Origin: Malacoraja senta
Lineage: Eukaryota
NCBI GenBank assembly: GCA_038087875.1
Contig: JAXLNO010003819.1
Coordinates: forward strand, 372,001-432,532
DNA: 60,532 nt
Direction of reading: 5' to 3'
Below, in pieces: positions 864 to 55,959 of this stretch (its first letter is position 1; each line of letters opens with the position of its first letter). The notes beneath the pieces are model-generated. The model saw only the letters and a program-made list of their open reading frames with translations. It was not told the origin of the DNA and did no database searches. The position numbers and the translations under genes were made by a program.

Positions 864-3161
864 CTACTTAGAGCACAGAAGTAAACGGCGGAGTCGGATA
901 GTTGCAGCCCAGAGATAGTTAACTTGGTGAATTTAGCCCCTGTCAGGAGATCCGCCGAGAACCTCGTTTTAGCAAAATCAGCGTTGTCCTCACCACCGTT
1001 TGAGTATTTCGCTAGGATAAACTGAAGCGGTTTGTCCGGCTTTTGCCGGTACCAGGACAATACATAAGAGTTCAATGCAGTATCATACGTGCAGCTTAGA
1101 GTGATCAGTTCCCCTTCTGTCTTCAAGCTCGCTGGCGGGCTTTGTGTGACAGAATCTCCATCACCTCGTTCTGCAAAACAAGAAATATACTGAAAACCAG
1201 ATAATATTGAACACATGGGGGCCGCGGAGGCAAAGAGCCATGCCGCTGAGGTCCTCTGGGGGGCGCTCGGCCGCAGGAGGCTCCCTGATCGCTGGACGCT
1301 GACCGGTTTCCTCAAGGTTTCAGTGGATTGGGGCATAGAAACATAGAAACATAGAAAGTAGGTGCGAGAGTAGACCACCAGGCCCATCGAGCCCGCACCG
1401 CCATTCGCTCATGGCTGAACACTAAACAGACACCCTTACCCACAAACAGTAGACACAAGACACAGAACACAAGACACTACCCTCCCCTTTATACCGCTAT
1501 CACCCCTCTCCACCCCAAGAACCGCGTGATCTCCTGGGGGAGGCAAAAAAACCGGATAAAAACCCAGGTCCAATTCGGGAAAAAAATCCGGGGCACTGTA
1601 GGTCCCGCATGAAGCTGGGGCTCAATTGCGTCAGGCGATGAAACAAAGACTGCACAGTGGCGCAGCGGTAGAGCTGTTACCGACTGCGCCGCAGATCCAG
1701 CTTCGATCTGGATAACGGGCGCCGCCTGCGTGGTGTTTGCACCCCCTGTGACCGCGTGGGGTTTCTCCTGGTGCTCCGGTTTCCTCGCCCATCCCATAGG
1801 CGTGCGGGTTTGGAGGTTGCTTGGCTTCTCCAAGTTGTGCCTAGCCTGTAGAATGGAACTAGTATGGGCGGTCGCTGGTCGGCGCGGACTAGGTGGGCCT
1901 AAGTGCCTATATCCACGTTGTATATCTAATCTAAATTAATCTAAACTGAACAAAAATCGTCATGCGCGCTGAGAGGACGCGGCCTGCAGCGAAAGAGCAA
2001 CAGTCGGGCAGATCCACATAATCGTCTGGCCAGGCCGAATCCTGAAACACAAAGCCAGTGTCGCCGCCACGCCAACTGGCCTTTATGCTAAAAGTCTTAA
2101 GGAATAACACTTATAACGACTGTGAACATGGAGGATGCAAGATGTCGCCGGAAACGTGGCAAGTCTTGTGTACTGCCTCAGAGTAATCTGCTATTCTTAC
2201 ATGTTCATAATAGCTCATAAGTTCTAGGAGCAGAATTAGGCCATGCGACCCATCAGGTCTACTCCTTCATTCAATCACGGCTGATCTATCCTTCCCACCT
2301 AAATCCATTCTTCTGCCTTCTCCCCGTAATCTCTGACAACCGTACTAATCTAGAATTTGTCGATCTCCGCCTTAAAAATGTCATTTGACTTGTCCCCCAT
2401 AGACGCATGTGGTAATGAATTCCACACATTCACCACCATCTAATGAAATAAATTCCTTCTCATCTCCTTTTCAAAGGTACCGCCTTTTATTCTAAGGCTA
2501 TGATCTCTGATTCTCGACTCGCCCACTCGTGGAAACATCTTCTGCACATTCACTCTATCCAGACCTTTCAGTATTCCGTCAGTTTCAAAGTGGCCCCCCC
2601 TCATCCTAAACTCCAGCGAGTACAAGACCAGTGCCTTCAAACGCTCATCACATGTTAACCCAATTATTCGTGGGAAGAGTTGTTTAAGAAAGAACTGCAG
2701 ATGCTGTAAAAATCGAAGGTAGACAAAAATGTTGGAGGAACACCACGAATTATTCGTGGGATAATTCTGGTAAACCGCCTCTGGATCCTCCCCAACGCCA
2801 GCACATCCTTCCTCAGATATAGGGCCCAAAACTGCCCATTCGTATATAAGGATTATTGTTCAGATGTCGACTGAATTGTGTGATTGTTCAGATGTCGACT
2901 GAATTTGATTATACGGCTGCTGGCATATTTAGTTCACTGCACTTATATGTGTATGTGATGAATAAAACTGATTGATTGATTGATTGATTGGTTCATTGAA
3001 ATAATTTCATGGTACCCGAATAGGTGTGATAATAAAATACCATTGAATCATTGAGCTTCAAAGTGATCCAACAGACAGAGAGATTAAATTATGTTTGATT
3101 CACACTTACCTGGCAGAAGCGCTGTCAAAAAGCAGAAATACAAGAATCGCATTGCATCCAT
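864..3161 (-). CDS. T-cell receptor alpha/delta variable segment V1 (leader + V exon), apparently functional, delta-like
   Basis: Leader exon 3161-3110 (MDAMRFLYFCFLTALLP, phase-1 donor G|GTAAGT). V exon 1170-864 follows the acceptor ttgttttgcag: ERGDGDSVTQSPPASLKTEGELITLSC...WYRQKP...DSAVYFCALS with Cys23/Trp41/Cys104. Followed by a perfect 23-RSS. Intron about 1.94 kb, full of repeats. Confidence 0.93.
1652..1950 (+). mobile_element. tRNA-derived SINE (elasmobranch HE1-like)
   Basis: Head gcacagtggcgcagcggtagagc with A/B-box-like motifs and a (ctaaa)n-like tail. Related copies near 6975-7250, 39830-40130, 41400-41590, 41945-42240 and 57440-57750. Confidence 0.7.
2208..2840 (-). mobile_element. 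CR1-type LINE 3' fragment with a nested short repeat
   Basis: ORF 2440-2829 carries the CR1 ORF2 C-terminal motif (LYSLEFRMRGG...RGHSLRIKG...EMRRNLF). Confidence 0.8.
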
Positions 3162-4031
3162 TCGGACTGTAGATTGTGAATATAGCAAACAGGGTTACGA
3201 AGAAGCAACTACGAAGAGAGATGAAAGGGTGGATCTCAGCATTTGAAGGTATATCTGGCGCCCTCCCACAGGAATTTGCGCGCGATCATCATGACCCTCT
3301 CTGCGTCACTACCTGTTGTCTCTGTTGGTGCAGTGGGATCGATGGGCGGGAGTTGAACAGTTACACTTACAGCTGAGCATCAGTTCGTTTTATTACCGGA
3401 CGCACTTTCGATTGAGGATTCAACTGGGGTAGCTGATGCCTTTGTCTGGATTTTGCAACGGTGGGAATTAATGGGAATAGATAATCCTCATCATTCAGAA
3501 AAGTCCTGAGTGATCGTAAACATAATTCACCAAATTACTCTACACTCTCTTAGGACATACATCAGATAGAACATCATATATTAGGTACGCCAGACACGAT
3601 GAGATTCGTCGTGAATTCAAACAGCTAAATTCAAGCATCTGGGTTATGTCTGCAATATTCTTTTCTTGAACATCAAGGCTCGCGTTACCGTTAGATGAAT
3701 TATCTTTATCATGAAGCGGGAAAAGCCATCCTTGCCGGTGTCATCGATGATCCTTGTTATTAAGACAAGGCTATCTTCCTTTGGCCATCGGTTTTGGGAC
3801 AAGTATCTATTTCACTTGGCAGAGAAAGGAAGATGAAAATGAATAGTGAACGCAGAATAGTACAGGAACTGTCCCCATATTTGTTTTGAATGCGATTCGA
3901 AGATTCGAAGAACATTATCCGCCTACACATGATCTATATCCCTATTTGCATATCCAAGTGCCTAAATAATAATAATAATACATTTTATTTATATAGCGCT
4001 TTTCAGGACTCAAAGTCGCTTAAATGACAGT

Positions 4032-4114
4032 TACCAGCAGTGGGTTTCGAACCCACGTGAACACTCGTTCATTGGATCTTAAGTCCAACCCCTTAACCAC
4101 TCGGCCATGCTTGT
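4032..4114 (-). tRNA. tRNA-Leu(TAA), possibly a variant or pseudogene
   Basis: 83 nt. D arm TGGCCGAGTGGTTAAGG, anticodon arm TTGGA-CTTAAGA-TCCAA, long variable arm, T arm GTGGGTTCGAAACCCAC. Acceptor stem ACAAGCA/TGCTGGT has one A-G mismatch. Confidence 0.85.
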
Positions 4115-54175: not shown

Positions 54176-54436
54176 AATGGGCGTGAGGTATTTCGAAAGC
54201 AGCGCCGTTCTGTTAAATCAACAACTGCGTATAACGTTGCTTTTTGCAATTAAGTCGTGGAATTTCGTGGAACACATGTTTAAGTTTGCTGTTAGTGCAA
54301 TATTTTGACGGAGTGGAGATATTCCGTGGACGGCGTGCCGTTTCCGCTTACAGCAAATGGTTTGCGGTGCCACTGCCTGCGCCACAATGATCTACGGCTG
54401 AACATCTGCAGCAGATGTGCCTCAGAAACGTGCAGC

Positions 54437-54475
54437 AGTTATTGTACGAGTCTGCACACTGTTCCAAACACTGTG
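54437..54475 (-). promoter_or_regulatory. 23-RSS of V8
   Basis: CACAGTG + 23 bp + ACAATAACT. Confidence 0.93.
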
Positions 54476-55959
54476 CGACTGCACAGTAATATATCGCCAT
54501 GTCAGACAGCCGTAGCCTCGAAATAGTCATCTGATATGTTTTAGTTGACTGCTGAACTTCGTCAGAAAACCGCTCACGAGCGAAATCCGCCTTATCGTCA
54601 TACCGTCCGTCAGTATATCTCCGGGCCAGAAACTCTGGGTGACCGTCGGGGTACTGGCGGTACCAATACAAGTAGTAACCATCCTTGGCAAAGGTGCAGG
54701 TTAAAATGGCGTTTTCCCCCTCTGTATGTGTAAGATAGGTCTTCTCTTGGGTCACGGAATCAGCATCACCCCGACCTGGAACACGTTAAACGGAGCGTTT
54801 ATTTGACTTAAATTTTCAAAACTGAACTCAAAAGACCGGAACGAATATGTTACAACAACAATTGCATTTAGGGCAGATAGTCAGTCCTTATATATCTCAC
54901 AGACTCTTTCGTCGCAGTGCACCGCCATCGATCACATGCCACTCTCCCCTCGTGTTCTATTCTGGAATCTGTTTGATTTATTTATAATATTTAGCTCTAT
55001 TATCCCGTGTGTGGAGCCGTTACATATTTCCTTGATAAAGAATATTCTGTCCCTTCCTGCATGGTTTACCGGCGTCCATAGAATCAAATAGACATAAAAG
55101 AGACCTCGAAATGGGTCGACATGAAAGAGACCTTTCGACCTAACTCGTCCTTGACAACCAAGATGCCCCATCTACTTAGCCCCAGTTACCGCGATAGGCG
55201 GACATCTCCTTATATCATCCCCTCTCTATGTACCTGTCCAAGTGTCTTTCAGATGCCCATTATAGAACCTGCCTCAACTACCCGGCAGCTCAAAGTTCAA
55301 TATAGTGACCACCCTTTGAGTGATAAAATGTTCCTCAGATTACTCTAAAAGGATTCCGCTTAGATCTATATCCTCTAGATCTAAATCTTATCGAACCCCT
55401 TTCTCTTGATGAAGGAAAACGGTGCATTCATCCTATCTATTTTCGTTTTATAATTTCATGCACCTCCATAGGTTCACCTCTGCGCTTGAAGGGATAAAGT
55501 CCCACACTGTCCAACCGCTCCATATATCTCAAGCGATCGAATCCGGGTAATATCGTTGAAACCACCCATACACGCTTTCAGAGAATGCGTAAACCATCTA
55601 TACACGCATTCCAGCTGAATCTACCATCTATACACGCCTTCCCATAGCATTCTTCCCAAACAGAACACAATCCACGAAATGCGGCATAATCACCGATGAT
55701 ACATTTTGAACACGAAATGTCAATGCTACGGAGCTGCAACTCTTCCAATGTTGATTGCATTGCTCGTTCAACTATTTCTTAAACTTATTTTTCTTAAAAG
55801 AGACGCAGAATACGTGTTGCATCGTAAATCTGGTCCAACAAATGAGCCACAGAAGTTGAACGAAGCCATCTTTCTGCAAAAACGCCACTGTTTACTAAAT
55901 TAAATTTTCTTACTGATAATGAATGTCGCCCACATGACAGTATGTACCATGAGGCGCAT
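54476..55959 (-). CDS. T-cell receptor alpha/delta variable segment V8 (leader + V exon), apparently functional
   Basis: Leader 55959-55914 (MRLMVHTVMWATFII, A|GTAAGA). V exon 54775-54476: SRGDADSVTQEKTYLTHTEGENAILTC...YLYWYRQYPDG...KADFARERFS...SDMAIYYCAV. Confidence 0.92.

What the first reader, a model, noticed from the sequence alone, without database searches (positions are those of the whole stretch)
864..55959. A GPR139-like receptor gene family is interleaved with TCR alpha/delta V segments
Seen: four two-exon GPCR genes (two intact 325-aa genes at 25164-28172 and 48764-50528; two pseudogenes at ~10110-11756 and ~34240-36830) lie between TCR V segments, giving the order V,V,GPCR,V,V,V,GPCR,GPCR,V,V,GPCR,V. 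Established: olfactory receptor genes flank, and in mouse intermix with, the 5' part of the mammalian TRA/TRD V array; mammalian GPR139/GPR142 are single-copy sensors of aromatic amino acids. Inference: in this fish an unrelated, expanding, birth-and-death GPCR family occupies the same kind of niche. That may be convergent co-duplication, or a real link such as an amino-acid or chemosensing receptor repertoire coupled to T-cell locus activation. I cannot tell whether this arrangement has already been reported.
Basis: partly seen in the sequence, partly recalled or inferred. Interest (0 to 1): 0.8.

Follow-up and report, generated by a model that had tools for sequence, protein, structure and literature searches.

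The report
Orphan receptor genes inside skate TCR array
In this skate, genes of a very large shark-and-ray receptor family (distant relatives of human GPR139) sit between T-cell-receptor V segments. The layout is real and shared with another skate and a sawfish, but it looks like two duplicating gene families sharing ground, not a working link.

Summary

**What is in the window**
- There are eight V-set segments. Seven have a 23-spacer RSS directly after the V exon; V4 is a pseudogene and V7 lacks the second Cys.
- They are interleaved with four two-exon class-A GPCR genes. G2 and G4 are intact at 325 aa. G1 and G3 are pseudogenes.
- No N run touches any feature.

**Why it is not an artefact**
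- A gap-free second copy of the region (C25) is collinear across all four gaps.
- Thorny skate keeps V7-V6-G3-G2 in the same order and orientation.
- Sawfish shows V-G-V-G-V within 22 kb.

**What the GPCRs are**
- Their closest solved relative is human GPR139 (profile E 1.8e-17; next best 5e-10), but they are not its orthologues.
- A TM3 motif pattern finds 1,584 copies genome-wide against 1 in the control, in arrays on many scaffolds that carry no TCR-like V.
- The four window copies fall in a clade that held only skate and sawfish sequences among those sampled.
- G2 is under purifying selection (dN/dS 0.22).

**Reading**
- One lineage of this birth-and-death family has expanded inside the TRA/TRD-type V array by local duplication.
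- A functional tie to T cells is unsupported. No RNA data were available.

**Prior reports**
- No paper I could search describes the family or the arrangement.
- The scan flagged the same pattern in several other windows of this genome.

The parts
825..1153 (-). V1: V exon plus 23-RSS (heptamer CACAGTG at 863, nonamer ACAAAAACC ending at 825). Open frame, ends YFCALSS.
   Evidence: The best single-V-domain PDB hits are TCR alpha chains.
7519..7850 (-). V2: V exon plus 23-RSS (CACGGTG / ACAAATACC). Open frame, ends YHCALS.
10142..11760 (-). G1: GPCR pseudogene. Exon 2 only, about 40% identical to G4, with internal stops. It is split by an ~800-bp insertion (about 10262-11049) that carries a repeat-like ORF at 10682-10987. 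No exon 1 was found.
14105..14415 (+). V3: V exon plus perfect 23-RSS (CACAGTG ... ACAAAAACC from 14377). Opposite orientation to V1, V2 and V5.
16714..16976 (-). V4: V pseudogene with stops or a frameshift, and the second Cys replaced (YYG).
20410..20777 (-). V5: V exon plus 23-RSS with a weakened heptamer (CACAGCA, nonamer ACAAAAACA, 20448-20410). Its leader is not secured, and gap 2 (21016-21213) lies just upstream.
25164..28172 (+). G2: intact two-exon GPCR gene (exon 1 25164-25233, exon 2 27265-28172; 325 aa). It has a 94%-identical orthologue in Amblyraja radiata.
   Evidence: dN/dS is 0.22.
34247..36830 (-). G3: GPCR pseudogene (exon 1 36830-36761, exon 2 35120-34247). The last base of exon 1 is changed, the DRF motif is deleted, and there is a frameshift after TM5. 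The Amblyraja orthologue (P0006) is intact.
40693..41015 (+). V6: V exon plus 23-RSS (CACACTG / ACAAAATCC). Ends YICAMR.
   Evidence: PDB hits are almost all TCR alpha or V-delta-1 chains. The Amblyraja orthologue is 83% identical over the full ORF by tblastn.
43084..43454 (+). V7: open V exon plus 23-RSS (CACATTG / ACAAAAACC), but the second Cys is replaced by Tyr (YIYAMR), so it is probably non-functional.
   Evidence: The Amblyraja orthologue is 87% identical over the full ORF by tblastn.
48764..50528 (-). G4: intact two-exon GPCR gene (exon 1 50528-50459, exon 2 49671-48764; 325 aa). It is 95% identical to a Leucoraja erinacea 'probable GPR139'.
54437..54758 (-). V8: V exon plus 23-RSS (CACAGTG / ACAATAACT). 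Ends YYCAVA.

Best explanation
The window is part of a translocon-type TCR V-segment array of alpha/delta sequence type in a skate. One lineage of a very large elasmobranch family of GPR139-related class-A receptors has settled and multiplied inside that array.

Both families grow and decay by local tandem and segmental duplication (birth and death). Duplications, inversions and retroelement insertions have therefore shuffled V segments and receptor genes together.

Shown:
- the arrangement itself
- its conservation in a second skate and a sawfish
- the integrity of G2 and G4, and purifying selection on G2
- the genome-wide spread of the family

Inferred: the co-residence is passive, two duplicating families sharing ground. 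It carries no T-cell function, and the receptors act elsewhere as ligand sensors with diversified pockets. A trivial consequence, also inferred, is that deletional V-J joining in T cells would remove the intervening receptor genes on that allele.
For: 1. Arrangement. It is confirmed at base level.

2. Not an artefact.
- The gap-free second copy on C25 is collinear across all four gaps.
- Amblyraja radiata chromosome CM021380.1 has V7(87%)-V6(83%)-G3 orthologue-G2 orthologue(94%) in the same order and orientation.
- Pristis pectinata has V-G(pseudogene)-V-G-V in 22.5 kb.

3. Extent. On C25 the two gene kinds alternate from about 1.675 to 2.203 Mb.

4. Age. There is no DNA self-similarity of 1.5 kb or more inside the window-equivalent stretch, and dS between paralogues is about 1.

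5. Local expansion. All four window copies sit in a 17-row clade (SH-aLRT 93) that held only skate and sawfish sequences among the 79 sampled.

6. Functional genes. G2 against its Amblyraja orthologue gives dN/dS 0.22, and paralogue pairs give 0.14-0.24. The core class-A residues are invariant in 97 family members: D2.50, C3.25 and the ECL2 Cys, DR, P5.50, N7.49 and Y7.53.

7. No special tie to TCR.
- There are 1,584 TM3-motif hits genome-wide against 1 for the control, in arrays on C1-C6, C9, C11-C15 and others.
- The TCR-like V hits of three searches fall on about eleven scaffolds. Only C25/C3819 and the C1 array also show family copies beside the V hits.

8. Co-duplication elsewhere. On C1, V-like fragments lie 3.6-3.7 kb downstream of receptor copies at two repeat positions.
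Against: - Expression was not testable, so a T-cell or thymic role is not excluded.
- Linkage of these V segments to J and C genes was not demonstrated. PF09291 and DAD searches of the genome found nothing.
- Conservation of the interleaving over the skate-sawfish split could also reflect selection for the arrangement.
- V searches score only the 150 best of about 440 candidates, so V segments in other receptor arrays could have been missed.
- In two sharks the nearest homologues have no V within 10 kb, but their orthology is unknown.
Confidence: 0.7

Rival explanations
1. Shared chromatin niche. Large receptor repertoires that are expressed one or a few per cell (ORs in mammals, this family in batoids) and antigen-receptor V arrays both favour the same kind of repressed, stochastically opened, duplication-prone chromatin. 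On this view the co-location is convergent but not accidental, without any direct T-cell function.
For: - Mammals independently have OR genes between TRAV1 and TRAV2, in conserved synteny in human, mouse and sheep (PMC4574546).
- Here a different GPCR family does the same over at least 0.5 Mb.
- The embedded copies come from at least three clades of the family, which suggests repeated entry or retention.
- The family has a chemoreceptor-like organisation: arrays, pseudogenes, and variable positions in the extracellular halves of the helices.
Against: - There are no expression, chromatin or allelic data.
- One receptor per cell is pure conjecture for this family.
- A single historical co-location followed by local duplication explains the same facts.
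- About 95% of copies by rough estimate lie outside V-bearing scaffolds.
Confidence: 0.15
2. Functional coupling. The embedded receptors are expressed in developing or mature T cells because they lie in the opened TRA/TRD chromatin, and they give T cells a ligand-sensing input. Alternatively, their promoters act as regulatory elements for V accessibility.
For: The only support is the conserved physical interleaving and the intact, constrained state of G2 and G4.
Against: - The same family is equally intact and abundant in arrays with no V nearby.
- Two of the four embedded copies are dead.
- Copies flip orientation relative to neighbouring V segments with no fixed pairing.
- No RNA evidence was available.
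Confidence: 0.07
3. Assembly or scaffolding artefact. V-bearing and receptor-bearing pieces were joined wrongly across the N runs.
For: There are four N runs in the window, the assembly is fragmented (6,182 contigs), and the region is present twice.
Against: - The gap-free C25 copy has the same order.
- Single ungapped blocks already contain both kinds of gene, for example window 21214-42243 with G2, G3 and V6.
- An independent chromosome-level Amblyraja assembly and a Pristis assembly show the same interleaving.
Confidence: 0.02

Closest known systems
Olfactory receptor genes interspersed with TRAV genes at the 5' end of the mammalian TRA/TRD locus (human OR10G2 and OR4E2; mouse Olfr1507-1509)
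   Same: Class-A GPCR genes of a large birth-and-death family lie between TCR alpha/delta V segments, and the arrangement is conserved among species (PMC4574546).
   Different: - In mammals there are two or three ORs at the extreme 5' edge only.
- Here a different family (nearest solved relative GPR139, not OR) supplies many genes and pseudogenes across at least 0.5 Mb of the V array.
- These copies come from several clades, and V segments lie in both orientations.
Human GPR139 (PDB 7VUG, 9M42), aromatic amino-acid / peptide-activated orphan receptor
   Same: - It is the closest solved relative by seven orders of magnitude with a family profile (E 1.8e-17 against 5e-10 for GPR15).
- Both have a TM7 NxxxY motif without proline.
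- H5x43 is kept in G2 and G4, and W6x48 is kept in G4.
   Different: - The single-sequence phmmer match is weak (34-36 bits) with a gapped alignment.
- GPR139 is a single conserved gene, whereas this family has about 1,500 motif-bearing copies in one genome.
- The N-terminus before TM1 is only about 7 residues long.
- F109 becomes S or W, N271 becomes Y, and R244 becomes D or Y in the window copies (residues from PMC5430874).
- These are not orthologues.
GPR210A/B, GPR139/142-related orphan clades reported in gar, coelacanth and some teleosts (PMC6504862)
   Same: They are non-mammalian orphan receptors that group next to GPR139 and GPR142.
   Different: The relationship to the elasmobranch family was not tested because no sequences were available to the tools. 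That survey contained no cartilaginous fish and reported only a few genes per species.
Trypsinogen genes embedded in the TCR beta locus (from general knowledge, not checked here)
   Same: An unrelated multigene family resides inside a TCR locus and is conserved across vertebrates without a known immune role.
   Different: The locus is TRB, the gene class is a protease, and the copy number is far smaller.

Membership tests
TCR alpha/delta V gene segments | Immunoglobulin V-set domain with the conserved Cys pair | tested here: met
   Pfam V-set scores E 1e-7 to 1e-16 for seven segments. The second Cys is present in V1, V2, V3, V5, V6 and V8, and is lost in V4 and V7.
TCR alpha/delta V gene segments | 23-bp-spacer RSS directly after the V exon | tested here: met
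   The heptamer, 23-nt spacer and nonamer lie flush with V1, V2, V3, V5, V6, V7 and V8. The only other 22- to 24-spacer hit (16587) lies about 130 bp beyond the V4 pseudogene.
TCR alpha/delta V gene segments | Closer in sequence to TRAV/TRDV than to other V classes | tested here: inconclusive
   - V6: PDB hits are almost all TCR alpha or V-delta-1.
- V1: the best single-domain hits are TCR alpha.
- V5 and V8: the lists are dominated by multi-domain antibody constructs.
- FR2 WYRQ and CAL/CAV/CAM endings are TRAV-like.
- No reference phylogeny was built.
TCR alpha/delta V gene segments | Linkage to TRDD/TRDJ/TRDC, TRAJ/TRAC and DAD1 | tested here: inconclusive
   PF09291 (TCR C-alpha) and PF02109 (DAD) searches of the genome gave no match. 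The short exons and divergence make this uninformative. No further DNA could be fetched.
TCR alpha/delta V gene segments | Somatic rearrangement and expression in T cells | not testable with these tools
   No RNA run holds the region. Read laying showed only genomic contigs.
GPR139/GPR142 receptors | Rhodopsin-class 7TM with GPR139 as nearest characterised relative | tested here: met
   Pfam 7tm_1 hits both intact genes. With phmmer, GPR139 is the only hit below 1e-5. The family profile gives E 1.8e-17 against 5e-10 for the next hit. NCBI names the homologues 'probable GPR139'.
GPR139/GPR142 receptors | Orthology: one or few conserved copies per genome | tested here: not met
   There are 1,584 motif hits in this genome, 3,366 first-look candidates, and 1,899 database proteins at E<=1e-5. 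The phmmer match to GPR139 is only 34-36 bits.
GPR139/GPR142 receptors | Agonist-site residues F109(3x33), H187(5x43), W241(6x48) and N271(7x38) (PMC5430874) | tested here: inconclusive
   G4 has S/H/W/Y and G2 has W/H/R/Y. The family majority is Y/D/W/N. The site is partly kept and variable among paralogues.
Vertebrate chemosensory GPCR repertoires (OR/TAAR-type organisation) | Hundreds of genes in tandem arrays with many pseudogenes | tested here: met
   Two of the four copies in the window are pseudogenes.
Vertebrate chemosensory GPCR repertoires (OR/TAAR-type organisation) | Sequence membership in the OR, TAAR, ORA/V1R or T2R families | tested here: not met
   The best OR hit is OR52c at E 6e-3. 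No OR or TAAR appears among the 60 best profile hits.
Vertebrate chemosensory GPCR repertoires (OR/TAAR-type organisation) | Expression in sensory neurons | not testable with these tools
   There is no RNA evidence. The catshark study found no GPCR among the 50 most specific 'brain & olfactory epithelium' genes (PMC11979771), which is not decisive.

The most novel reading that the evidence does not exclude
The GPR139-related family (about 1,500 motif-bearing loci in this skate, with arrays on many chromosomes) is an undescribed major ligand-sensing, possibly chemosensory, receptor repertoire of elasmobranchs, animals known for having very few ORs. Its embedding in the TRA/TRD-type V array, paralleling ORs in the mammalian TRA/TRD locus, would then reflect a shared stochastic-choice chromatin environment and not an accident.
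Probability: 0.15. Interest if true: 0.85.

Novelty: new variant of a known kind. Interest (0 to 1): 0.55.

Why it matters
Unrelated gene families living inside antigen-receptor loci are known: ORs at the edge of the mammalian TRA/TRD locus, and trypsinogens in TRB. This case is far more extensive. It involves a different receptor family and is conserved across skates and a sawfish.

It gives immunogeneticists who annotate cartilaginous-fish TCR loci a concrete caveat, because the V array is not a pure V array. It also offers a natural experiment on whether genes embedded in a recombining locus are expressed, silenced or somatically deleted in T cells.

The larger point lies beside the finding. 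The embedded genes belong to a receptor family of roughly 1,500 copies for which I found no published description. Elasmobranchs are thought to have a minimal odorant-receptor repertoire, so this family deserves deorphanisation and expression mapping.

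Tried and rejected
1. RNA evidence. Two sequencing-run searches (G4, G2) listed no RNA holders. The single read-laying run showed only genomic contigs, one of them running through the G4 intron, and no spliced joint. Expression is therefore untested.

2. Locating J-C. 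Pfam PF09291 (TCR C-alpha) and PF02109 (DAD) searches of the genome found nothing at the thresholds used.

3. Naming the V segments by homologues. The search for homologous proteins with V1 gave only two uninformative hits. The Atlas gave mixed TCR gamma, alpha/delta, beta and Ig labels.

4. Sharks.
- Heptranchias and Stegostoma loci around the nearest homologues hold receptors but no V within 10 kb.
- Heterodontus, Mobula, Scyliorhinus and Chiloscyllium records returned no DNA or no record.
- Presence in sharks and chimaeras stays open.

5. Mapping all of C25. The wider map therefore rests on search coordinates only.

6. Same V-receptor cassette on C1 as in the window. I rejected this: on C1 the V fragment lies downstream of the receptor on the same strand, whereas V8 lies upstream of G4.

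7. Phylogeny with GPR139, GPR142, OR, TAAR and ORA references. This was not possible because no reference sequences could be cited by id. PDB sequence and profile rankings were used instead.

8. Literature. None found a description of the family or the arrangement.

Full report
**Observation**

The window is G000:C3819:372001-432532 of a 1.94-Gb skate assembly. The best protein match is 95% identical to a Leucoraja erinacea protein.

Six-frame ORFs, Pfam and tblastn show eight V-set segments and four rhodopsin-class GPCR copies.

A scan for RSSs with 22- to 24-nt spacers finds six flush against V1, V2, V3, V6, V7 and V8. One further 22-spacer site at 16587(-) lies about 130 bp beyond the V4 pseudogene. 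V5 has a 23-RSS with a weakened heptamer, CACAGCA. V4 is a pseudogene, and V7 is open but has Tyr in place of the second Cys.

The N-terminal exon of the receptors was located with the first 45 residues of homologues, at 25164, 36830 and 50528. Canonical GT/AG phase-1 splicing gives 325-aa products for G2 and G4.

G1 lacks exon 1, has stops, and is split by an ~800-bp insertion carrying a repeat-like ORF. G3 has lost the DRF motif and has a frameshift.

**Gaps and assembly**

None of the twelve features contains an N.

The window is inverted-collinear with C25:2136497-2196629, a stretch without any N, at 98.6-99.9% identity. The six alignment blocks break only at the four N runs. The flanks keep order and orientation, and the spacing on C25 (167/200/154/445 bp) is close to the N-run lengths. 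I compared coordinates only and did not read the letters opposite the gaps.

Single ungapped blocks already hold both gene kinds; for example, 21214-42243 contains G2, G3 and V6.

Gap 2 lies ~240 bp upstream of V5's V exon, so V5's leader is unverified.

**Other species**

- In the chromosome-level Amblyraja radiata assembly (CM021380.1, 58.78 Mb), a 23-kb locus carries the orthologues of V7 (87%), V6 (83%), G3 (intact there) and G2 (94%). Order and orientations match the window.
- In the sawfish Pristis pectinata, 22.5 kb around the closest homologue reads V(V8-like, with RSS)-G(pseudogene)-V(V7-like)-G-V(V6/7-like).
- A second Amblyraja locus 6 Mb away has two receptors and no V.
- In the sharks Heptranchias and Stegostoma, the nearest homologues have no V within 10 kb.
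- Other shark records gave no DNA.

The interleaving is therefore real and old among batoids. Its presence in sharks is open.

**What the V segments are**

They are isolated V exons with 23-RSSs in a translocon-like array, in both orientations.

V6's solved relatives are almost all TCR alpha or V-delta-1 chains, and V1's best single-domain hits are TCR alpha. FR2 WYRQ and CAL/CAV/CAM endings fit TRAV/TRDV. V5 and V8 gave lists dominated by antibody constructs.

I could not find C-alpha or DAD1 in the genome with Pfam models. The 'alpha/delta' label is therefore likely but not proven by linkage.

**What the receptors are**

- *Nearest relatives.* phmmer against all PDB chains finds GPR139 as the only hit below 1e-5. 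A 30-member family profile gives GPR139 E 1.8e-17, followed by GPR15 at 5e-10 and chemokine and peptide receptors. No OR or TAAR appears among the 60 best. NCBI calls the homologues 'probable GPR139'.
- *Not orthologues.* The N-terminus before TM1 is only about 7 residues. Of the four residues that mutagenesis shows to be needed for GPR139 activation (F109, H187, W241, N271; PMC5430874), G4 keeps two (H, W) and G2 keeps one (H). The family majority is Y/D/W/N.
- *Functional signature.* The core class-A residues are invariant in 97 members. Variability concentrates in the extracellular halves of TM2-TM7 and in the tail.
- *Selection.* G2 against its Amblyraja orthologue has dN/dS 0.22 (dS 0.12). 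Paralogue pairs give 0.14-0.24. These are working genes.

**Genome-wide distribution**

A protein search gave 3,366 first-look candidates. All 128 scored hits had E<1e-97 and were mostly open, on dozens of scaffolds.

A degenerate DNA pattern for the TM3 motif W-x-T-V-x-F-x-x-D-R-[F/Y] hits 872+712 places, against 0+1 for the reversed control. The motif is present in 108 of 120 family proteins and, in the window, only in the two intact genes. So there are roughly 1,500 motif-bearing copies, with some haplotig redundancy.

Three V searches place TCR-like V segments on C25, C3819, C41, C1453, C1 (111.5-112.2 Mb), C2693, C2460, C4 and three dense arrays of a more distant V type (C2882, C1170, C3276). 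Of these scaffolds only C25/C3819 and the C1 array also show family copies beside the V hits (C4 has both, about 25 Mb apart). None of the other receptor-array scaffolds listed appears (for example C4520, C5841, C4312, C1242, C385, C9, C5).

Receptor density in the V array is about 40-50 per Mb. That is like V-free arrays such as C9:40.19-40.49 Mb.

The V array thus hosts a few of many arrays, by rough estimate about 5% of copies.

**History**

- In a 79-sequence tree, all four window copies fall in a 17-member clade holding only skate and sawfish sequences (SH-aLRT 93). Shark proteins Hfra_P0004, Stig_P0011 and Scan_P0034 lie outside it (quick tree, midpoint root).
- Two other receptors from the C25 V region belong to different clades.
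- No DNA-level repeats of 1.5 kb or more link V-receptor units inside the window-equivalent stretch, so these duplications are old.
- Further along C25 there are young V-only repeats.
- On C1, V-like fragments lie 3.6-3.7 kb downstream of receptor copies at two repeat positions. That is direct evidence that V and receptor can be co-amplified.

**Interpretation**

The simplest account is passive co-residence. One receptor lineage entered or adjoined the V array before skates and sawfishes split. Both families then duplicated, inverted and decayed in place.

Nothing here supports a T-cell function for the receptors, and the same family thrives without V segments elsewhere. A softer, more interesting possibility is a shared chromatin niche for stochastically expressed repertoires, which would parallel ORs in the mammalian TRA/TRD locus (PMC4574546). 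It remains untested.

**Literature and earlier notes**

A survey of vertebrate class-A receptors names GPR139/142-like orphans GPR210A/B in gar and coelacanth, without cartilaginous fish (PMC6504862).

The scan's own notes flag the same pattern in several other windows of this genome. Two follow-up reports reached compatible views.

Noticed in passing
whole genome G000 (for example C1:111.44-112.13 Mb, C5:31.46-31.68 Mb, C9:36.8-40.6 Mb): The GPR139-related family is enormous. A TM3-motif DNA pattern hits 1,584 places against 1 for the reversed control, in tandem arrays on many scaffolds. I found no paper describing it.
   Followed up: partly
window 1-60532 versus G000:C25:2136497-2196629: The window's scaffold C3819 is an inverted, 98.6-99.9% identical second copy (probably a haplotig) of part of C25. 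C41 likewise duplicates C3819:0-190 kb by coordinates. Copy counts in this assembly are therefore inflated.
   Followed up: partly
G000:C1:111478390-112153477: A receptor array of 24 motif hits at about 16-30 kb spacing carries V8-like fragments 3.6-3.7 kb downstream of receptor copies at two repeat positions. An open V lies at 112153193. This suggests the TCR-type V region may belong on chromosome-scale scaffold C1.
   Followed up: no
window 43084-43454 (V7) and L026:2960-3382: V7 is open and has a good RSS, but Tyr replaces the second Cys. Against its Amblyraja orthologue it shows 16.5 non-synonymous and 1.5 synonymous differences (dN/dS about 3, small counts).
   Followed up: partly
window 20410-20777 (V5) and 54437-54758 (V8): The PDB hit lists for V5 and V8 are headed by antibody heavy-chain, nanobody and scFv constructs, not by TCR chains. 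It may be worth testing whether they are Ig-like V segments of the kind sharks use in TCR delta. Summed multi-domain scores confound the ranking.
   Followed up: no
window 43574-46600 (+); 58931-59239 (-); 53658-54059 (-); 10682-10987 (-): There are several mobile-element remains:
- a decayed LTR-retroelement pol (RVT_1, RNase H, weak integrase) between V7 and G4
- a Tc1/mariner (Sleeping Beauty-type) transposase HTH fragment
- repeat-like ORFs, one of them inside the G1 pseudogene
   Followed up: partly
G000:C3819:10000-65000 (=C41), G000:C25:2215000-2258700: There are young V-only tandem repeats without receptors: an ~8.3-kb period on C3819/C41, and ~21.5-kb units at 84-97% identity on C25. 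Different parts of the V region are therefore amplifying separately.
   Followed up: partly
G000:C2882, C1170, C3276: Dense same-strand arrays of a more distant V type (33-44% identical to the window's V segments, about 2-3 kb spacing) probably belong to another antigen-receptor or V-set locus.
   Followed up: no
window V1, V2, V4, V5, V8 (-) versus V3, V6, V7 (+): V segments lie in both orientations within 60 kb, and this is conserved for V6 and V7 in Amblyraja. Some would have to rearrange by inversion.
   Followed up: no
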